Assembly: GCA_907165135.1 (NCBI GenBank) | Contig: OU015569.1 | Location: 2,356,001 to 2,420,000, forward strand | Direction of reading: 5' to 3' | Length of the DNA: 64,000 nucleotides | Origin: Oikopleura dioica | Taxonomy: Eukaryota; Animalia; Chordata | In this document: positions 54,540 to 64,000 of the stretch, piece after piece | Position numbering within the stretch: position 1 is the first letter of the stretch | Layout: each line of letters begins with the position of its first letter | Translations under genes and position numbers: made by a program | Notes under the pieces: generated by a model | Databases searched by the model: none | Told to the model about the DNA's origin: nothing | What the model saw: the letters and a program-made list of their open reading frames with translations, nothing else

Positions 54540-56025
54540 AGCACGATTTTAGTATAAATTGATGTGTATGTTCTTCAGCGTCTTTGTCTTGGATGACAAG
54601 TGTAGTCATATTTCTTCGAAAAAGACGCTATCCTATAGTTAGTGTAGTCCTCCGCAAAGTAAGGCTCGCATCCATTCATTCCCCCTCTAACGGCATCTAA
54701 CCGTGAAAAAAGTCCCTAAATAAGAAAGTTAAATGAAAAAAAAAACAAATATTATTCTTACGATCGGAACGGAATCATTGCCTTCTTCGTCGACAAGTGT
54801 TTCCTTTAAAAGTTTAATGTGGAACACTGGATATTCATCAGGATCACTTCTATTATCTGTCACAAAGCCCAATAGATACGAATATCTATGACAGACGCTC
54901 CAGTTTATGTCGCTACAAAACTTGCTCGCCATCGCTAGTTCTTGATCGTCTGTGATTTCAATATCAGCCATGAGAATCGGTAGGGCGGTCGCTGGGCACT
55001 GAAAGAACAATCAAAATGATGGAGTCTTAGCTGACTGACCTGAAAGGCGAATTTAGGTGGAAAATACAAATCTCCGACATCTACCTCCTCGTGATAACCA
55101 TAATCTACATAGTAACACCAAAGCCGGTAATCGTCATTATTCATCAACTTCTGATGGCGAGTAGGTTTTAGCCCGGGCGCGGATTCGAAAAAGAATCGCC
55201 TTCTTTCAAAGTATGATCTATGGTTGAGGTCAAACCACTTTCCGTGTTGAATGATTACTCGGTCGACCGCCTCGATACCTTCAGTACATTTAAGCAGCAA
55301 CATATTGGGCTTGAGATGTTGTTCTCTTCCTCGAACAGCGTATGGCGGCGGTAGTGATACAGTCGGTCGACTAGAATTCATTCCTCCGATTTCTTTTCGT
55401 CGCTCGTCTGCGAACTTCTGTAGCTTTTTAGTCATTTCCGATTCCATCAAATAGTATTCGTCGTCGGTGGTCCTCCGTATTTTTACAGCCATTTTTCGAC
55501 AGCTGACAAGGAACCCCGACTGAGCGTTTAGCAAAAAAGTTTTGCCATCTTCATCGCGATACTTCGCCTCTTCGAATATTTTCCATTTTTCTTCTCGCCA
55601 CAATTTCTGGTCTTGATCAGTCGCGATAGTTTCCAATTCAAAATTTTCAAGAGACGGACCAGTTTCGTTCGTTATTTTTTTCCCAAATAAATTGCGGTGT
55701 TGACGCCAGACCGGGTCTGAATCAAGGATAAAAAAGTCCATTTTCTTTTACTTACGCGACGATGGCTATCTCTTCAATGTTTTGAGCAGAGCGATCTTTA
55801 TATGCGGCCATTTCTTTCAAATGGGAAGCATACGGACTTGTTACCAAGTACAAAAGCATCTCTTCGTGGCCTTCAGCGATCGACTCCGGATATTGATAGG
55901 GCAGTCTAAATTTCGTCTGCTAAAGAGAAATGTTTTTGAAAGAGCCCACCTGAGAACAGCAAACGCATCGTACCCCTGATGAACTCTTGTTTGCTTATTT
56001 GCCCTTCGTAATTCTTCCGATCCAT
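54540..56025 (-). CDS. Hypothetical multi-exon lineage-specific protein
   Basis: 268-codon (54935-55741) and 93-codon (54729-55010) open frames separated by short GT-AG introns, plus a further exon at about 55760-55925. Joining frames not fully resolved. Confidence 0.5.
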
Positions 56026-56196
56026 CCAAGAGAGAGAACAATTTGACGAGAAGACTTGATGCCACACGGTCCGCTCGTAGTGTCTGAGCGAGTCTGTTGA
56101 TTCGGCGGTTCTGTTTCAGAGGCTGCGGTGCGGTCTTTCTCTGTTGCTATCTTGTACGAGCTGTGACGAATGAGAAGTAGTGCCCCCCACTAACAA

Positions 56197-59100
56197 ATGG
56201 TGGTGGAGGACGATGATGAACTGAATTCATCTTCCCGTCGCAAAAATAGAACAGAAGATGCAAGGATAAATGAGGATGAAAGAACAACATCCTCATGGTC
56301 TAACAAAAACGGTCAAAATACCCCCACGCAGCCAGAGCGTGGTAGGCGGTTAGACTCAAAAAGCACCGATGACGTGGAGGGTGACAGCAGGTCGAGCAGA
56401 TGGGATCTCGGAGGCGAGCGTCGCCTCGTCAACACGAAAGATGACCATAAAAGCCGATCATGGATATCAGAGAAATTCAACGAGCCTCAGGAATTGAGGT
56501 TCCTCCCTCCATGCACTCCACGTCGCAGAGCGCGAAGCGAGGACGAGTCGATGATGATGAGTCCCAAGCCAAAAAGTCAAGAGACGACCCTCACAACCAA
56601 TCACCACCTGCTAGAGGCTACACTCCGAGTTTCCGCGGTAAGAACAAAAGAGGCCGTGGACGTGGTAGAGGACGTGGCGCTGGCAGAGGCTCGGCCTTCC
56701 GGGCAAACAGAGGTGAGCTTTCAAAACGTACCCATTATATCAAACCCCTTTTCACAAGGCACGCAACGGGAACATGGCCAAGACAACATCAATCGGCCCA
56801 ACCAACCGCGTCGGCTCTTTGCTGGAATAGGAATCGATGATGGACGGGCGTCATCCTCGACCAATGACGCCGAAAGGAACACCAAAATTGTGAGGATCGA
56901 AGACATTAGGCACTATCCAGAGAATATCCCCATGGTAGAAGAACTTTTCGACGAGCGGGGAAAATTCCTCAGAAAGGAAAACGGGCACAATTACATCGCC
57001 AGCTCGGCTAAGGAACTTCTCACATACGAATACACCATGGACAAGATGATCATATTCAAAAAGGTCAAGTTTCACGAAGAGCGCTTTTACGAGGACATCA
57101 TCGCGAATGGAAGATTCCCACGAACTGGAATCATGCTCGACATGGACTGGATCCCCCCAAGCTGGAAGAATATGGAGTATGACCTTCATATAATCACATC
57201 GGTCACAGTATTCGTGATGCAAGACACACTCGACAAATTGTGCATCCCAATGAAAGATATCAAATCCATGATAGTCATCAAAGAGGACGGTTCACTAGTA
57301 CCCCTCAACTCAGGGGCGCTAACAGAAAACAAGAAGGCAACTGTAAGGGGCATACAGTTCTACTCTACAGTCTCCGCGCTGAAGATGATAACGCTGGCCA
57401 ACGAGTGCCTGTCGCCGGTAGACCCCTTCTACGGCTGCAATAAGATACCTAGAATGGCGATGTTCTGGTGCTCCACAGAGCGCAAAGACAGATTGGGGCA
57501 CTCGGCAATGGTTGCCACTCCCAATTGTGGAAAGACGATCATCGAAGTTCTATGCGCCGTCCTGAAACGCTACATGTACTACATTCGGAAATGCGGAGAA
57601 TTCTACACCTTTCACAGCAAGAGCAACGTCATCAACGTTCTCCCGCTACGAACTATCTTCGACCTGTCACTCAAGGAAATGGAGGATGAGAAATTCTCTC
57701 CCTCGTATGACAGGTTCAAGGATTGGATGAACCTCTACAAACCCTACGTGTTCGACAGAAGATGCGCGGCCATGTCAGTGTCCATTGAGAGATTCCATCA
57801 TCAAATGACCAAAACGGTACTCGCAATGCAAGAATACCATCTGGGCCGTGGCAACTCGCACTGGTTTACTATGTCCACCGACGACGCGTTCAAGATGAAG
57901 GTGAAGGATCAACAAGAGATCGCCAACGTCACGGAGGGAAAGATTACGATCGCCGATGTTGGTGCCAACCCTGACATTGGCATGTTTCGACCTGAGATCG
58001 CCAAAAGAAAAGGGGTATTTATGAACGATCTTGACAGGGTACGAGACGAACCAAGAGCGTGTGACAGCATCAAGCACATGGCCGGCGGCTCAGTTCAGGA
58101 GGTATCCGACGAACTCAAAAGAGTGGTCGAACAAACAAAGGACCAAGAGGAGGCTATCTCCAACGTCATGCTTTTCAGTCACTCCAACAACCGACAAGCC
58201 CTGAACTTTATGATCGAGATGCAAGCTATTAACACCAAACACGCAACTACGGTAGAGGAGAAGAGTGAAAAGCAAAATCTACTCGCCAAAATGCAAATCT
58301 ATCGAAAAGAGCACAAGCTCCTATTCGACACCGACCCAACGTTGCTGGGAACTGTTAAAAGAAGTGTCGGGGAGCAGATAGAATGGGGCGTAAATACGAG
58401 GAACGCGAACGGCGATAAATACCGGGTGCCAATTGCTGAATACCTCAAGGATGGACAAGGCGATCAAACGACGAAAATCGCGACTATCAAGACGAAGGAC
58501 CCGGAGTATAAATTCAACATTGCTGAATTCTACATGCAAGCCGGAAGTGAAGTCGCCCAGAAGTACATCCCTCCTGTCAAGGAAGATGCGAGGGTTCAAC
58601 CGATGGATGATGATGAAGCACCATCCTCCGTCCAAAACATTAGCCATCCCTTAGATAAATGTCAGAATGATGGTACATCGTCTATGGGCAGGGAGAGCAA
58701 AGGAGAGGACACAGATCTGGAATCGCTCCTAGATGAAGATGAAAAGAAGAAATCTCTGGAAGCAGCGAAGCTCACCGAGCCCAAACAATACCTGATTAAA
58801 CAAATGATGAAAGCAGCGAATGTGAGGATGTCAGCCTTCACGGACGATGATGCCTCTGAGGTATCGGTCTTCTGCAGCGCAGTCAGCCCGCCGGATGTGG
58901 CCAACGTAGCTGAAGTGGTGACTCCGAACCTAGTACAAATTTCAAAGATAGACAAAGGAAAGCCAGTGGACAAGGAAGTCATCGAAAACACCGGGTCTAT
59001 CGTAAGCAATGCTAAGGCAAAATGGAACGCCATCTCACCCGCCGAGGAAGAATCGTCATGGAGGAACACGGTCGCTGTCTATAGATCCGCGGATGAATTC

Positions 59101-62100
59101 CTGGAGAAAGAGAACCTTCAATCGTACCCCGACCCTGAGGCGTTCACGAAGGCTCAGACATTGGCGGAGTGTGCAAGGACTGACCTGGAAAACACGATTA
59201 GGAGATACATACAGTCTAGCAACAAAAATGACATTAACACGGCCTGTCGGAAATGGCAATCCCTGATTTACGGACTAAGGGGATCTCTGATTAATCGATT
59301 GGAGAAACTCATCAACTGCGCGGAGGGCGAGTCTGCAGCCTCTTTAGGCCTAAACGACCCGGAAAAGCTCAAAGAATGGAACGGTTTCCTGAGAGCAAAC
59401 CGGAACTTCAGGGAGGTGTTACACGACCCTGAGAAGCTAACCGTGCTTCATTGCTGCGACCCGGACGTCCTATCTCAAGACATGCCAGTCCCCAAATCAC
59501 TAGCGATCTACAACTATGTGAAACTGGCTGGAATGGAGATGAACATCGACTGCACAAAGACGTGTGCCAACATCGTCATGAGCCAGCTGGTCGCGCTTGG
59601 ACTAATCGTCACTAGCAGAAGAACTCACGCTGCAGTATACAATCCGGGCGAGCTGCCGGGACAACATCTTCTTAAATCGAAGCCCATCTTTGTTAGAGTA
59701 ATTAAGGTAGGCCCAGATTTTACACACAAAAGGTGGTTAATGGCCAAAGAGTTTGTAAGGACAGTTGCAATTAAGGAGTACAAGCAAGAACTTGACTTCA
59801 CTATAGACGACGTCCCCGACCTAGCCATGAATGAGCCACTTTTTCAGCTGTTTATAAATGAATTCTGGAGGAAGGTGGTGGCTAACAACCTCACGCTGGG
59901 GTTTAGAATCTGGATGAGGAAGCATGACTATCTAACATCATGCTCTTTTAGGGGTCTCACTAACGAAGATGACTCAAACTGTACAGACGGACTACCAGAC
60001 CTCCCCCATCCCCCACTCACCATCACCTTCAAACAATTCAAGAACCTGTGCGAGATACAAAGAATGAAGAACAAAACACACAAGGTAAATGATATCATTA
60101 GAAGTGGAGAGGTACCCAAAATGCCAATTAGTCATGATATTCCATCCCCCCATGTATTTGCCAAAGGGAGAGGCCTAGAAGGAGTATTACCTGCGGCTGA
60201 GAATCTCCCCAAACTTAAACGATCGAGTAAAAACATCATCCCAACTGAAGGGGATCTAGAGAAAGCCGTGACAGAACATAATGAAAAGGTTGTCTCTGCT
60301 GCAGACAACCTAACAGTTGTATGCGCCAATCTTGGAAAGTGCTCCACGCTGGACAAGATTAAAAAACTGGTCAGAAGGCACCGAGGAGCCCACATCTTCA
60401 CGGTGGCAGAGTTGTTTATCGAAAGAGATATGGCGTTAGACAGAGATAATTGGCCCGACGGATATCGTATACTGGCAGGCCAAGGGTCGACTGATGGGAA
60501 AAACCAATGCTTTTCCTTGATAGTAATTAGGTCTAACATAAAGGTTCTAAGGACAATCAACTGTCTACATCAAAACGCTGGGGCGCTATTGGACGTCAAC
60601 GGCATCGAGATCTACATATTCTCAGTATACAACTTCTGCAACTCAGCCTTCGATGGGTACAAGAACAAGTTCGGCGTCAGCAGAGATGTCCTATACGAAG
60701 ACCTCAACAAAATGAGGATGATGAGCACCGACCATCCTGCTATAATCGCAGGTGACTTTAATGTACAAGTCAATAATCCTAGGTGTCATGAGAGGAGTCA
60801 AGCGGACAAGATCCAGGCAGCAATGGACGGGTTCGAAAGGCTCACTAACTTCGTTACATTCAGGAGAGACTGTAAGAATGGGCGCACGATGGAGAGCTGT
60901 ATCGATCATATCTACTTCTCACCCGGGAAAATCGACACCAACGAGATCTCCTGCAAGCCTGCCGATCACAGGACATCACTCGGGTCAGACGGTCACTGCG
61001 GAGTCATCTGCGAAATCCCAATCAGAGCTCCCGAAGGCAAAATATGGAAACTCTGGAAGGTACCGGACCAGAAGGAGAAAGATGAATGTTATAAAATAGG
61101 TATGAAAATGATGCTAAATAATATCGAAAAACTAGATAGGATGAAAGGCGACATGGATGAGGTCCAGCTAAGGCATGAAATTTTGGTGCAATATGCTCAG
61201 AAAACTCGGCCACTAGTCGACAAAATTAAGGTAACAGATCCTTATAAAATTGTGCAATCAAAAGCTACCAAAGAATGGCTGCAAGCTGGCTTCTACATCG
61301 AAAACCTCATAAAACAGAGCAAGATCGACGAAGTGCCACGAAGATGGTGGATCAGCATCGTCGACCTGTGGAATGAAATAAAGAAGATGATTGTGAAACT
61401 GAAGTGCGCGGACCGTAGATACCATCTTGCAAGAAAGTGTGACCCCGAGGAGCTATCTCTAACCGACTCTTGGGGCCTCTTTGGGCGCGAAATCAAGACA
61501 GCGAATGCACTCAGCATAGACGGCACGCCAAACCAGATTGCCGAAGAATTCGTACAATTACAGAGAAACACGAGTCCGGAGCTAGAAGGTTGTGTCGGAG
61601 ACAAAGACGACCGCCTAACCACGTTACCAAAAGTATGTATAGAAAGATTCCGCGTGCACCCATGCGGAAAACTGCCAGCACTGGTAACAGTGTATAAAAA
61701 GTCCAAAAAAGCGACATGTGATGTCTTTAATATTAATAAGACTTGTCTAGAAACGCTGCCGCTCATAGGAGTACTGACGCTGGTCATCATGCCTGTAATG
61801 CTTGCTCTTCGAAACGGTAAGCTACTAAGAGTATGGAACTGCAACAGGGTAGTCCCAATACTTAAAAAGAACCTAAAGAAGCGACCTATAACCATCGCGT
61901 CCACAATAGGCAGTCTGGCAGAGAAAATGGTCTGCAAAACCTTCACGGACTATGTAATGCACTATGGCATAGTACCAAGTGTACAGTTTGGGTTTCGAAA
62001 AGCAAACAGCTGCGGAGCGGCTGTGTACCACTGTGCCAAGACGTTGTCCATGGCCATAGCTCCACAATTTGTGGATCATTGCGGCAGACAATTAGAGGAA

Positions 62101-64000
62101 GTAGTAGGAGGTATGGTCCTCATCGATGCCGCCAATGCGTTTGGCACGGTGGCTCATCCTCTGCTGATGAGCCTCCTGGGCCAATTCTGCTCGGATCTGT
62201 TCCTAGGATTCATTGAATCATTTTTGATCAGGTCCTTTAAAGTATGCATAAGGGGTTTCCTTAGCGAGGAAAAAGAACTAGAGGCTTTTGGGTTGCCTCA
62301 AGGCTCATCCTTGTCACCCATTGCATACAGCGTATTCAGCGCGGGCTTTCTTAAAAACCTCCGTTTAGATCCCGCTGAAGATAACTCTACCTGCGCCGAT
62401 GGGGCACAAACGATGTGCAACTGCGATCATCATCCGGGTGGACGAACGAGCTGCCTCGAAAACGGTTTGATCCTTGGCGAAAGAAAGGACGACAATGACA
62501 TTAGCGTTATAGCCGGACAGAAAGCCGCCTTCGCGGACGATCTGGCTGCATTGATCATCGCGCCAAACTCAACGGAAGCCGCCGTATCCCTGACATCCAC
62601 GATCAGCCGAGCTACTAAGGAGATCAATGAAAAAGGGCTCAAGGTCGCTGAAACGAAGACAGAATGCTTCTTTGTCAGTAAGTCTAAGATCCCCGAGGAA
62701 ATAACCTTTAACTCAACCACCATCAAAGCAAGTGAAAGCGTCAAGTACTTAGGAATTACCCTATCGGCAGAAAGAGGCAAAATATCCTATAGAATGCATG
62801 ACATGAACGTCATGAGGAGGATGAGGGCGAATCATCATAAACTCATGACTCTTAAAGGAACGATATCACCAGTAGCAAATGCCAATATGGCAAGAGCTCT
62901 GGACATCGGAGTCATTAACCACGGAGCGGACTACAAGCCACTACCTTGCATCTCTATCACCAAGAGTTGGCAAAAGATTTATTGTTATACCCTGGCTAGG
63001 GTCTCGCCAAGGCCATGGTATATTGTGGAAATGGAAAGAAAGCTAATCCTTGAGGGAGGAAACCTATCCTCAATAATGAGAACGCACGAACCTCTCTGGG
63101 TTTCACTGAATTATCAGAGACTTGTAGTAGGAAAGCCCAGAGCGGACGAAGGGCTCGAAACGCTGGACAGATTCCGGCAGCCAACAATCTTTGATAACCT
63201 GATCTGCATGGCTATCAACAATATGCATAAGGTATTCAGATTGCGCACACCGGACACAGCGTGGAAAGCTCTGAGAGGTTGTCTCATCATGGTCAATGAA
63301 AGAGGAGAAAGCATTGGTCCGTTATTCGATTTCGGACGATGTGACAGATACACCGAACACCTTAGTGAGGAAACTAGATTTAGTGATGTTAGAAAATATG
63401 GGTTGTTCACATCGAAAGAACACAGTCACATAACTAAACTACGTTTGAATAGAGCCAGATTTAGGGCACTCTTCAATGCACAGGCTGTGACAGTGCGGTT
63501 CACCCTACCTAGGTCTCAGGATAACGGTCTGAGAATTGACAGGACGCAATGGCCCTACAACATGATGGCTCATTTTAACGATCTGCCTGCAAGTGTAAGG
63601 GCGGACTTTGTGCAAGATTGGTTTCCGAGCAGTCTAAAGAGATTTATGAAAGACAAACATAAACACTGGAAACGAAAAATTTGGTGTGAAAAATGTAGAT
63701 ATAGTTCCCCGTTCTATAACTATGATCTGCAAGTCGAGCTAGGAGACGCTCATCAAGTTACTAGAAGCGCGAAAAGAACGTATAGCACAAAGGAGGACAT
63801 AAAAAGAGACAAGGAATACGATAAGTTATATGCAGAAATGCAGAATAACCAGGAAGACGCAAGCAAAATCCTGTCCATGCTCATTTGGTGGAGGCCATAC
63901 AGGCTCAATAATGTAGCATTCAAGGACTTCGAGGCTATAATGCAAGTCATTCGATACCTGATGGCATATAAAGGATCAGGCACAGATATCATGCGCTTGC
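56197..64000 (+). CDS. Single polyprotein of more than 2,600 aa: unknown N-terminal region, APE endonuclease, reverse transcriptase
   Basis: Manual translation of frame +1 shows no stop from ATG 56197 to the window end. APE motifs LTVVCANL (60310), IFTVAE, IAGDFN, IDHIYF and SDGH (to about 61000). RT motifs VVPILKK, RPITI, QFGFR, LIDAANAF, LPQGSSLSP, FADD (62530) and KYLGI. Confidence 0.93.
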   Translation, partial: MVVEDDDELNSSSRRKNRTEDARINEDERTTSSWSNKNGQNTPTQPERGRRLDSKSTDDVEGDSRSSRWDLGGERRLVNTKDDHKSRSWISEKFNEPQELRFLPPCTPRRRARSEDESMMMSPKPKSQETTLTTNHHLLEATLRVSAVRTKEAVDVVEDVALAEARPSGQTEVSFQNVPIISNPFSQGTQREHGQDNINRPNQPRRLFAGIGIDDGRASSSTNDAERNTKIVRIEDIRHYPENIPMVEELFDERGKFLRKENGHNYIASSAKELLTYEYTMDKMIIFKKVKFHEERFYEDIIANGRFPRTGIMLDMDWIPPSWKNMEYDLHIITSVTVFVMQDTLDKLCIPMKDIKSMIVIKEDGSLVPLNSGALTENKKATVRGIQFYSTVSALKMITLANECLSPVDPFYGCNKIPRMAMFWCSTERKDRLGHSAMVATPNCGKTIIEVLCAVLKRYMYYIRKCGEFYTFHSKSNVINVLPLRTIFDLSLKEMEDEKFSPSYDRFKDWMNLYKPYVFDRRCAAMSVSIERFHHQMTKTVLAMQEYHLGRGNSHWFTMSTDDAFKMKVKDQQEIANVTEGKITIADVGANPDIGMFRPEIAKRKGVFMNDLDRVRDEPRACDSIKHMAGGSVQEVSDELKRVVEQTKDQEEAISNVMLFSHSNNRQALNFMIEMQAINTKHATTVEEKSEKQNLLAKMQIYRKEHKLLFDTDPTLLGTVKRSVGEQIEWGVNTRNANGDKYRVPIAEYLKDGQGDQTTKIATIKTKDPEYKFNIAEFYMQAGSEVAQKYIPPVKEDARVQPMDDDEAPSSVQNISHPLDKCQNDGTSSMGRESKGEDTDLESLLDEDEKKKSLEAAKLTEPKQYLIKQMMKAANVRMSAFTDDDASEVSVFCSAVSPPDVANVAEVVTPNLVQISKIDKGKPVDKEVIENTGSIVSNAKAKWNAISPAEEESSWRNTVAVYRSADEFLEKENLQSYPDPEAFTKAQTLAECARTDLENTIRRYIQSSNKNDINTACRKWQSLIYGLRGSLINRLEKLINCAEGESAASLGLNDPEKLKEWNGFLRANRNFREVLHDPEKLTVLHCCDPDVLSQDMPVPKSLAIYNYVKLAGMEMNIDCTKTCANIVMSQLVALGLIVTSRRTHAAVYNPGELPGQHLLKSKPIFVRVIKVGPDFTHKRWLMAKEFVRTVAIKEYKQELDFTIDDVPDLAMNEPLFQLFINEFWRKVVANNLTLGFRIWMRKHDYLTSCSFRGLTNEDDSNCTDGLPDLPHPPLTITFKQFKNLCEIQRMKNKTHKVNDIIRSGEVPKMPISHDIPSPHVFAKGRGLEGVLPAAENLPKLKRSSKNIIPTEGDLEKAVTEHNEKVVSAADNLTVVCANLGKCSTLDKIKKLVRRHRGAHIFTVAELFIERDMALDRDNWPDGYRILAGQGSTDGKNQCFSLIVIRSNIKVLRTINCLHQNAGALLDVNGIEIYIFSVYNFCNSAFDGYKNKFGVSRDVLYEDLNKMRMMSTDHPAIIAGDFNVQVNNPRCHERSQADKIQAAMDGFERLTNFVTFRRDCKNGRTMESCIDHIYFSPGKIDTNEISCKPADHRTSLGSDGHCGVICEIPIRAPEGKIWKLWKVPDQKEKDECYKIGMKMMLNNIEKLDRMKGDMDEVQLRHEILVQYAQKTRPLVDKIKVTDPYKIVQSKATKEWLQAGFYIENLIKQSKIDEVPRRWWISIVDLWNEIKKMIVKLKCADRRYHLARKCDPEELSLTDSWGLFGREIKTANALSIDGTPNQIAEEFVQLQRNTSPELEGCVGDKDDRLTTLPKVCIERFRVHPCGKLPALVTVYKKSKKATCDVFNINKTCLETLPLIGVLTLVIMPVMLALRNGKLLRVWNCNRVVPILKKNLKKRPITIASTIGSLAEKMVCKTFTDYVMHYGIVPSVQFGFRKANSCGAAVYHCAKTLSMAIAPQFVDHCGRQLEEVVGGMVLIDAANAFGTVAHPLLMSLLGQFCSDLFLGFIESFLIRSFKVCIRGFLSEEKELEAFGLPQGSSLSPIAYSVFSAGFLKNLRLDPAEDNSTCADGAQTMCNCDHHPGGRTSCLENGLILGERKDDNDISVIAGQKAAFADDLAALIIAPNSTEAAVSLTSTISRATKEINEKGLKVAETKTECFFVSKSKIPEEITFNSTTIKASESVKYLGITLSAERGKISYRMHDMNVMRRMRANHHKLMTLKGTISPVANANMARALDIGVINHGADYKPLPCISITKSWQKIYCYTLARVSPRPWYIVEMERKLILEGGNLSSIMRTHEPLWVSLNYQRLVVGKPRADEGLETLDRFRQPTIFDNLICMAINNMHKVFRLRTPDTAWKALRGCLIMVNERGESIGPLFDFGRCDRYTEHLSEETRFSDVRKYGLFTSKEHSHITKLRLNRARFRALFNAQAVTVRFTLPRSQDNGLRIDRTQWPYNMMAHFNDLPASVRADFVQDWFPSSLKRFMKDKHKHWKRKIWCEKCRYSSPFYNYDLQVELGDAHQVTRSAKRTYSTKEDIKRDKEYDKLYAEMQNNQEDASKILSMLIWWRPYRLNNVAFKDFEAIMQVIRYLMAYKGSGTDIMRL
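56460..56840 (+). CDS. Overlapping 126-aa basic RG-rich ORF inside the retrotransposon 5' region
   Basis: Frame +3 ORF with KRGR and RGRGRGRGRGAGRG, overlapping the main frame. Confidence 0.5.
   Translation: MDIREIQRASGIEVPPSMHSTSQSAKRGRVDDDESQAKKSRDDPHNQSPPARGYTPSFRGKNKRGRGRGRGRGAGRGSAFRANRGELSKRTHYIKPLFTRHATGTWPRQHQSAQPTASALCWNRNR

What the first reader, a model, noticed from the sequence alone, without database searches (positions are those of the whole stretch)
56197..64000. Non-LTR retrotransposon with one giant ORF of more than 2,600 aa and a 1,370-aa unknown N-terminus
There is no stop codon over 7.8 kb, and the ORF is absent from the supplied track only because it runs off the edge. 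APE-type LINEs usually have a separate ORF1 and an ORF2 of roughly 1,000-1,300 aa that begins with APE. Here APE is preceded in frame by about 1,370 residues with no CCHC knuckle or RRM that I can recognise, and more than 400 residues follow the RT core. The intact frame implies a young, possibly active element with a fused or novel ORF1 region.
Basis: partly seen in the sequence, partly recalled or inferred. Interest (0 to 1): 0.75.

Follow-up and report, generated by a model that had tools for sequence, protein, structure and literature searches.

The report
Giant fused-ORF LINE retrotransposon in Oikopleura
The 7.9-kb open frame is real: it encodes an intact 2,623-residue protein of a jumping gene found only in Oikopleura, in which a family-specific ORF1-like part is joined directly to the endonuclease and reverse transcriptase, and it is only the first 44% of an unusually large unit of about 18 kb.

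Summary
Observation confirmed. The ORF starts at window 56197, right after an in-frame TAA. It stops 69 nt past the window edge, giving 2,623 codons. APE motifs lie at residues 1376-1602 and RT motifs at 1896-2187, all intact.

The genome is Oikopleura dioica OKI2018_I69, and the copy is unique at DNA level. The 1,370-residue N-terminus is not a private accident. Divergent paralogues in the same genome (22-51% identity) keep two domains:
- Domain A (about 254-572) has a weakly RRM/ACT-like core.
- Domain B (about 951-1371) is a helical bundle with no known fold match.

A profile search of 1.84 billion proteins found domain A in only 18 proteins. Every named one is from O. dioica.

A marine metagenome contig carries the same layout as one unbroken 2,872-codon ORF. 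The distant paralogue C2b splits ORF-A from ORF-B with a textbook -1 frameshift signal, which would yield the same fusion protein.

The unit is larger than reported. A conserved 729-residue ORF-C follows. Conserved antisense coding blocks follow that, inside one 18-kb block of distinct base composition.

"Young and active" is not shown. The scan had already found this family at another locus (s1-390047).

The parts
56100..56196 (+). Probable 5' edge and short leader of the element
   Evidence: GC and A>T skew jump at about 56,100. An unrelated minus-strand ORF ends at 55741. No homology with the paralogues lies upstream of this point. The exact end was not determined.
56197..64000 (+). Giant ORF-AB of 2,623 codons; the last 22 codons and the TGA lie 1-69 nt beyond the window
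56197..56916 (+). Residues 1-240: R/S/E/D-rich, probably disordered N-terminal region
   Evidence: 73% disorder-promoting residues. Poorly conserved; homology to paralogue C1 starts near residue 118.
56956..57912 (+). Domain A (residues 254-572), the conserved core of the ORF1-like part
   Evidence: Aligns in five lineages with 14 invariant residues. The AF2 core at model residues 55-160 has pLDDT 65-89 and a ferredoxin-like beta-alpha-beta fold. The best structural neighbours are an ACT domain (Z 5.2) and many RRMs (Z 3.2-4.3). A profile search found 18 proteins in 1.84e9, and all named ones are O. dioica.
57913..59046 (+). Residues 573-950: acidic, variable linker. In C2b and C4 the ORF-A/ORF-B boundary falls in the equivalent region.
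59047..60309 (+). Domain B (residues 951-1371), a conserved pre-APE domain
   Evidence: Conserved in all lineages. AF2 gives a helical bundle with pLDDT 67-95 for residues ~970-1135. No PDB or viral match: best VIA Z 4.6, Foldseek E>0.1.
60322..61002 (+). APE endonuclease (residues 1376-1602)
   Evidence: Pfam PF03372. Motifs N1378, E1405, D1520/N1522, D1570 and D1598/H1600 are conserved across the family.
61882..62757 (+). Reverse transcriptase motifs (residues 1896-2187)
   Evidence: Pfam PF00078. Motifs RPI, DAANAFG, PQG..SP, FADD 2112-2115 and YLG are conserved. An insert of about 70 residues separates the PQG and FADD motifs.
63658..63696 (+). Conserved H-x-H-x6-C-x2-C motif in the C-terminal domain (residues 2488-2500)
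   Evidence: Present in C2ref, L043, P0010, C4, C2b and C5a. A zinc-binding role is inferred.

Best explanation
The ORF is the intact main gene of a LINE-type (APE + RT) retrotransposon lineage of Oikopleura dioica, most probably the family known as Odin.

It encodes a constitutive ORF1-ORF2 fusion polyprotein. Its parts, in order, are:
- a disordered basic/acidic N-terminus;
- the orphan domain A, with a possibly RRM-like nucleic-acid-binding core;
- a variable acidic linker;
- the orphan helical domain B;
- APE, RT and a C-terminal H-x-H...C-x2-C domain.

Inferred mechanism: the polyprotein binds its own RNA in cis, through domain A and the basic regions. APE then nicks the target DNA and RT copies the RNA by target-primed reverse transcription. 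In relatives such as C2b the same fusion product is made from two ORFs by -1 ribosomal frameshifting. The fusion is therefore the functional form, and this lineage has hard-wired it.

The ORF is the 5' 44% of a unit of about 18 kb. The unit also carries ORF-C (729 residues) and an antisense set of coding blocks.

Shown here: the ORF itself, its motifs, its domains, paralogue collinearity, the fused layout in L043 and the frameshift signal in C2b. Inferred: RNA binding, cis preference, target-primed reverse transcription, and mobility of the whole 18 kb as one unit.
For: - ORF and motifs.
- LINE type: APE lies N-terminal to RT, there are no LTRs or TIRs, and the nearest Atlas clusters are all APE+RT LINE proteins (score 0.96).
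- Species: the public model of this locus is Oidioi.mRNA.OKI2018_I69.XSR.g13921.
- Family: PMC4122922 names Odin as a non-LTR retrotransposon exclusive to Oikopleura. PMC8008620 classes the oikopleurid non-LTR elements as LINE/Odin.
- ORF-A/ORF-B homology in paralogues C1, C4, C5a and C2b.
- Frame breaks: those of C1 and C5a fall inside conserved domain B, at different places and at A5 runs. These copies are decayed, or mis-assembled, versions of a fused frame.
- Fused layout elsewhere: L043 has an unbroken 2,872-codon ORF followed by an ORF-C homologue.
- Frameshift signal in C2b: the A_AAA_AAC heptamer abuts the ORF-A stop, and a 10-bp GC hairpin lies 7 nt downstream (-29.4 kcal/mol, z -4.6).
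- ORF-C is conserved in C1, C4, C5a, C5b and L043.
- Antisense blocks are collinear in C1, and a few are also found in C4 and C5a.
- One 18-kb block with raised GC and positive A>T skew matches the homology span.
Against: - No target-site duplication, poly(A) or 3' repeat tail was found, so the ends are not defined.
- The copy is single at DNA level and has no truncated copies. Recent mobility is therefore unproven, and domestication cannot be excluded.
- The RRM-like reading of domain A rests on a 5-sequence alignment, a mean pLDDT of 53 and Z <= 5.2, which is within the background range stated by the tool.
- Odin membership rests on the literature and on host range, not on a tree with reference sequences.
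- The split in C4 has no canonical slippery heptamer and may be a simple indel.
- The assembly is nanopore-based (PMC8008620), so single-base frame states in the paralogues are uncertain.
Confidence: 0.75

Rival explanations
1. The retrotransposon is conventional in size, about 8-10.5 kb, comprising ORF-AB with or without ORF-C. The downstream antisense coding blocks would be host genes that happen to lie next to several copies, for example through insertion preference or segmental duplication.
For: No element ends were found. The antisense pieces match no Pfam family. C4 and C5a share only one to four short blocks with this locus.
Against: The order and orientation are the same in four lineages on different chromosomes at 25-50% protein identity. 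The GC and A>T-skew block runs without a break across the antisense part and stops where the homology stops. An independent follow-up at C2b reached the same view (s1-390047).
Confidence: 0.15
2. The locus is a domesticated or otherwise immobile relic. It would be a single-copy host gene derived from a LINE and kept intact by selection for a host function.
For: The copy is single, with no near-identical or truncated copies, no tail and no target-site duplication. Three ORFs remain intact even though the nearest relative is only 34-51% identical.
Against: All endonuclease and RT catalytic residues are intact. Sister copies show typical transposon decay: C1 and C5a have frame breaks, and C5b and C4b are truncated to RT fragments. 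Many deep lineages at low copy number is the pattern reported for O. dioica transposons (PMC4122922).
Confidence: 0.08
3. The single giant frame is an artefact. A one-base assembly error or private indel would have fused two ORFs that are normally separate.
For: The assembly is nanopore-based (PMC8008620). Paralogue frame breaks sit at A5 runs.
Against: Protein homology to C1, C4, L043 and P0010 runs without a break through the whole pre-APE region in the finding's frame. The independent metagenome contig L043 has the same fused layout.
Confidence: 0.02

Closest known systems
Odin, the Oikopleura-specific non-LTR retrotransposon family (Volff et al. 2004, as cited in PMC4122922 and PMC8008620)
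   Same: The host is the same. The element is APE + RT and lacks LTRs. The literature read here names no other non-LTR family for O. dioica. Every APE-RT locus found in this genome with this query belongs to one family.
   Different: I could not read any description of Odin's full architecture; Volff 2004 and Naville 2019 are not held. The 2,623-residue fused ORF, domains A and B, ORF-C and the antisense blocks may therefore be undescribed. Membership itself was not tested against a reference sequence.
L1-type LINEs with separate ORF1p (coiled coil, RRM, CTD) and ORF2p (APE, RT, Cys-rich domain). Comparison from general knowledge.
   Same: A nucleic-acid-binding-like protein part lies upstream of APE-RT. 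Domain A has a possible RRM-like core. A Cys/His motif follows the RT.
   Different: ORF1 and ORF2 are one frame here. Domain A has no sequence similarity to ORF1p or to any Pfam family. A conserved helical domain of about 420 residues sits between the linker and APE. There is an extra ORF 3' of the RT ORF.
Retroviral and LTR-retrotransposon gag-pol expression by -1 frameshifting or as an in-frame fusion. Comparison from general knowledge; see also the review PMC5009743.
   Same: Family member C2b has an A_AAA_AAC heptamer plus a hairpin at the ORF-A/ORF-B overlap. This copy makes the same fusion constitutively, as single-ORF LTR elements do.
   Different: The element is a non-LTR element and has no protease or integrase. 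With a constitutive fusion, no excess of free ORF-A protein can be produced unless there is processing or internal termination.
Terminons, the giant Athena/Penelope-like retroelements of bdelloid rotifers (Arkhipova et al. 2017). Comparison from memory.
   Same: It is a very large RT-bearing unit with several extra conserved ORFs of unknown function.
   Different: Terminons use a Penelope-like RT, with or without a GIY-YIG endonuclease, and lie at telomeres. Here the RT is a LINE type with APE, and the loci are interstitial.

Membership tests
APE-type non-LTR (LINE) retrotransposon | APE endonuclease N-terminal to the RT in the same protein, with catalytic residues present | tested here: met
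   PF03372 at residues 1384-1577 and PF00078 at 1888-2189. The N, E, D/N, D and D/H motifs and FADD are conserved.
APE-type non-LTR (LINE) retrotransposon | No long terminal or terminal inverted repeats | tested here: met
   Self-BLAST of 26 kb around the unit finds no flanking repeats.
APE-type non-LTR (LINE) retrotransposon | 3' poly(A) or simple-repeat tail, target-site duplication, and 5'-truncated copies | tested here: inconclusive
   None was found. With a single copy and undefined ends, this absence is not informative.
Odin clade | RT groups with reference Odin sequences in a phylogeny of non-LTR clades | not testable with these tools
   No reference Odin or other clade sequences were available. 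The word search with the APE-RT part was blank. Only an internal family tree was built.
Odin clade | Restricted to Oikopleura/larvaceans | tested here: met
   All named relatives are O. dioica. The rest are unnamed marine metagenome proteins.
L1-like ORF1p | RRM domain with coiled coil and CTD | tested here: inconclusive
   The AF2 core of domain A is ferredoxin-like. ACT scores Z 5.2 and RRMs Z 3.2-4.3, all within background. There is no Pfam or PDB sequence match.
CCHC-knuckle gag-like ORF1 (I, Jockey, CR1 types) | CX2CX4HX4C zinc knuckles | tested here: not met
   There is no zf-CCHC hit at E<=1. The only CxxC in the protein is at residue 2497, in the C-terminal domain.
2A-peptide single-ORF LINEs | D-x-E-x-NPGP motif separating the products | tested here: not met
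   No NPGP-type motif occurs in any family member.
-1 programmed frameshift between ORF1 and ORF2 | X_XXY_YYZ heptamer in the overlap plus a downstream structure | tested here: not met
   Not needed and not present in this copy, which has a single frame. It is met in paralogue C2b.

The most novel reading that the evidence does not exclude
The whole 18 kb is one retrotransposable unit. It would be a LINE that has reached virus-like complexity. It makes a 2,623-residue ORF1-ORF2 fusion polyprotein built around two orphan domains. It also carries a third sense ORF and antisense genes that appear to contain introns. Antisense genes can ride through the RNA intermediate because their introns are not spliced from the sense transcript. 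Downstream ORFs might be expressed the way Oikopleura resolves its operons, by spliced-leader trans-splicing; a pyrimidine-rich tract ending in AG lies about 23 nt before the ORF-C ATG, but this is speculation.
Probability: 0.5. Interest if true: 0.8.

Novelty: new variant of a known kind. Interest (0 to 1): 0.62.

Why it matters
LINEs are normally 4-8 kb, with ORF1 and ORF2 translated separately and ORF2 starting at the endonuclease. This family breaks several of those habits:
- Depending on the lineage, ORF1 and ORF2 are either joined in one frame or linked by a retrovirus-style -1 frameshift.
- A conserved ~420-residue domain with no structural match in our searches precedes the endonuclease.
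- An extra ORF and antisense coding blocks follow the RT ORF.

It offers a natural experiment on whether a LINE can work with a strict 1:1 ratio of ORF1 to ORF2. It also provides two orphan domains to characterise. Finally, it corrects a public gene model that splices away much of the RT and fuses it to the next gene.

Tried and rejected
**Searches that found nothing**
- Word-based protein searches with ORF-A, ORF-C and the APE-RT part were all blank.
- The ESM Atlas search with domain A gave no usable hit.
- PDB sequence searches with single sequences and with profiles found nothing credible. The only hit, domain B against a BtrH-N-like protein at E 0.003 and 19 bits, was rejected because the family conserves no Cys/His residues there.
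- Foldseek PDB and BFVD searches gave nothing at E <= 0.1.

**Ideas rejected**
- An env-like or membrane role for ORF-C: it has no transmembrane segments.
- 2A peptides.
- LTRs or TIRs.
- A target-site duplication: the only shared 12-mer lies inside the upstream gene and is at chance level.
- Pfam families on nine antisense pieces: only a sub-threshold RING hit.

**Tools and papers not available**
- Volff 2004 and Naville 2019 are not held.

**Handling of broken copies**
Broken paralogues were used piece by piece.

Full report
**Observation**

Frame 1 from window 56197 is open to the window end, a total of 2,601 codons. The ATG follows an in-frame TAA at 56191-56193.

The window is G000:C2:2356001-2420000. 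Reading on in the same contig, the frame closes at a TGA 67-69 nt past the edge, so the ORF has 2,623 codons.

Pfam finds only two families: Exo_endo_phos at residues 1384-1577 and RVT_1 at 1888-2189.

**Organism**

The genome has 64.28 Mb in 19 contigs. The public protein for this locus is Oidioi.mRNA.OKI2018_I69.XSR.g13921.t1 of Oikopleura dioica. This is not human sequence.

That public gene model is chimeric. It starts at window 56460 in another frame, skips 61816-62358 and 62704-64100 as "introns", and fuses onto the next ORF. Both skipped stretches are open, conserved coding sequence, and they include RT motifs.

**Relatives in the same genome**

The locus is single-copy at DNA level. 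Protein searches find divergent paralogous elements:

| Label | Location | Identity to this ORF |
|---|---|---|
| C1 | C1:12.19 Mb | 34-51% |
| C4 | C4:14.14 Mb | 24-26% |
| C5a | C5:3.71 Mb | 25-27% |
| C2b | C2:4.58 Mb | about 24% |
| C5b, C4b | C5:4.31 Mb, C4:12.85 Mb | RT fragments only |

Stop-to-stop maps show a common plan. ORF-A has about 900-1,100 residues. ORF-B has about 1,800 residues and holds APE and RT. A third ORF-C of 630-780 residues lies 3' of the RT ORF.

In this copy A and B form one frame. ORF-C starts at an ATG 61 nt after the stop (C2:2420131-2422320) and has 729 residues.

**Is the fusion private?**

No. A profile of domain A, searched against 1.84 billion representative proteins, found 18 hits. 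Five of them are 2,500-2,870 residues long. Every named hit is from O. dioica.

One hit, P0005, has the same length as and clusters at 90% identity with Bergen protein CBY22502.1. It lies on marine metagenome contig Ga0115008_10004838 (locus L043). There it is one unbroken ORF of 2,872 codons, followed 53 nt later by an ORF-C homologue that runs to the contig end.

P0005 and P0010 are collinear with the finding's ORF from domain A to the C-terminus.

**Frame breaks in the paralogues**

The frame breaks of C1 and C5a lie inside conserved domain B. They fall at different positions and at A5 runs. These copies are therefore decayed, or mis-assembled, versions of a fused frame.

In C2b and C4 the boundary lies in the variable linker.

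C2b has a textbook -1 signal. The heptamer A_AAA_AAC abuts the ORF-A stop, and a 10-bp G+C-rich hairpin lies 7 nt downstream. The fold is -29.4 kcal/mol, z -4.6, and none of 200 shuffles folds as well. Frameshifting there would yield the same A-B fusion product.

C4 has no canonical heptamer.

A midpoint-rooted RT tree gives (C2b,C4b) | ((this copy,C1),(P0010,(C4,(L043,(C5a,C5b))))), with five of six inner branches strongly supported. The fused and split states are therefore interleaved on the tree.

**Anatomy of the N-terminus**

- **Residues 1-240.** R/S/E/D-rich and poorly conserved.
- **Domain A (about 254-572).** It has 14 invariant positions across five lineages.
  - AF2 with only five sequences gave mean pLDDT 53. 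A core at model residues 55-160 scored 65-89 and has a beta-alpha-beta-beta-alpha pattern.
  - VIA-align lists an ACT domain at Z 5.2 (rmsd 2.8 over 62 residues) and many RRMs at Z 3.2-4.3. Foldseek found nothing below E 0.28.
  - I read this as a ferredoxin-like, possibly RRM-like fold. It is a lead, not a result.
- **Residues 573-950.** Acidic and variable.
- **Domain B (about 951-1371).** Conserved in every lineage, and always in the ORF-B frame where the ORFs are split.
  - AF2 gives a helical bundle with pLDDT 67-95 for residues ~970-1135.
  - No structural neighbour was found: best Z 4.6, Foldseek E > 0.1 in both PDB and BFVD.
- **Motifs not found.** There is no CCHC knuckle, no 2A motif and no transmembrane segment.

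**Enzymatic part**

APE motifs: N1378, E1405, D1520/N1522, D1570 and D1598/H1600.

RT motifs: RPI 1896, DAANAFG 1976-1983, PQG..SP 2033-2041, FADD 2112-2115 and YLG 2184.

All are present and conserved across the family. An insert of about 70 residues separates the PQG and FADD motifs. An H-x-H-x6-C-x2-C motif lies at 2488-2500.

The Atlas places the APE-RT part among ordinary APE+RT LINE clusters, with a score of 0.96.

**Beyond the ORF**

ORF-C is homologous in C1 (E 1e-65), C4 (7e-8), C5a and C5b, and in L043. It matches no family or structure.

Downstream of ORF-C, tblastx finds minus-strand coding blocks at C2:2424046-2428414 and a little beyond. They are collinear with C1. A few are shared with C4 and C5a in the same relative position. 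They carry no Pfam family.

A block of raised GC (0.44-0.54, against 0.37-0.43 in the flanks) and positive A>T skew (+0.1 to +0.3) runs from about window 56,100 to about C2:2,430,000. That is 18 kb, and it covers the antisense part. C2b shows a similar block of about 17 kb.

There are no LTRs or TIRs. I found no tail or target-site duplication.

**Earlier notes of this scan**

After I had seen the paralogues, the scan's notes showed that C2b had already been followed up as a "giant multi-gene LINE retroelement" of at least 17 kb (s1-390047). Its frameshift site had also been noted (s1-331770). My results on C2b agree with both. This locus is therefore a second, more intact and fused member of a family the scan had already met.

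**Verdict**

The giant ORF is best read as a constitutive ORF1-ORF2 fusion polyprotein of an Oikopleura-specific LINE family, probably Odin, within a much larger multi-gene unit.

Its N-terminus consists of two conserved orphan domains. "Young and active" is unproven, because the copy is single, has no close copies and has undefined ends.

The literature available to me gives no architecture for Odin (PMC4122922, PMC8008620), so the layout appears to be undescribed. I could not read the primary papers.

Noticed in passing
window 56460-64000 and C2:2420101-2422293: The public gene model OKI2018_I69.XSR.g13921.t1 (P0001, 2,614 residues) is chimeric. It starts in another frame at 56460 and splices out 61816-62358 and 62704-64100. 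Those stretches hold RT motifs and the whole C-terminal domain. It then fuses to ORF-C.
   Followed up: yes
L025:8780-8830 (C1), L029:8230-8300 and L030:200-250 (C5a): Three of the frame breaks in the decayed paralogues sit at the same kind of short motif, an A5 run followed by C. This points to slippage-type indels, nanopore homopolymer errors or programmed slippage; the three cannot be told apart here.
   Followed up: partly
L035:669-994 (C2:2430669-2430994): A segment of about 330 bp just beyond the 18-kb block has a 94-96% identical copy at C4:1809064-1809458 on the minus strand. It is a separate small repeat next to the probable 3' edge.
   Followed up: no
window 54935-55741 (-): A 268-residue ORF lies on the opposite strand directly upstream of the element. 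Its only hit is a sub-threshold Tudor match (E 0.1). It is not shared with the paralogues, so it is probably the flanking host gene.
   Followed up: partly
window 62320-62529 (residues 2042-2111): An insert of about 70 residues lies between RT motifs PQG..SP and FADD. It contains Cys/His residues that recur in most family members but is absent from C2b.
   Followed up: no
L003:3345-3854 (-): A 170-residue minus-strand open frame just 3' of ORF-C has a C-x2-C ... C-x-H-x2-C-x2-C pattern. Pfam gives zf-RING_5 at E 0.05, below threshold. It was not among the blocks conserved with C1.
   Followed up: partly
C2:2432030-2433025 (L035:2030-3025): An inverted repeat of about 190 bp at 77% identity lies about 2 kb beyond the block.
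   Followed up: no
L028:1287-4505 (-) (C4 ORF-A N-terminus): ORF-A of paralogue C4 has a long RGG/RG-rich low-complexity N-terminus. This is typical of RNA-binding proteins and is absent from this copy.
   Followed up: no
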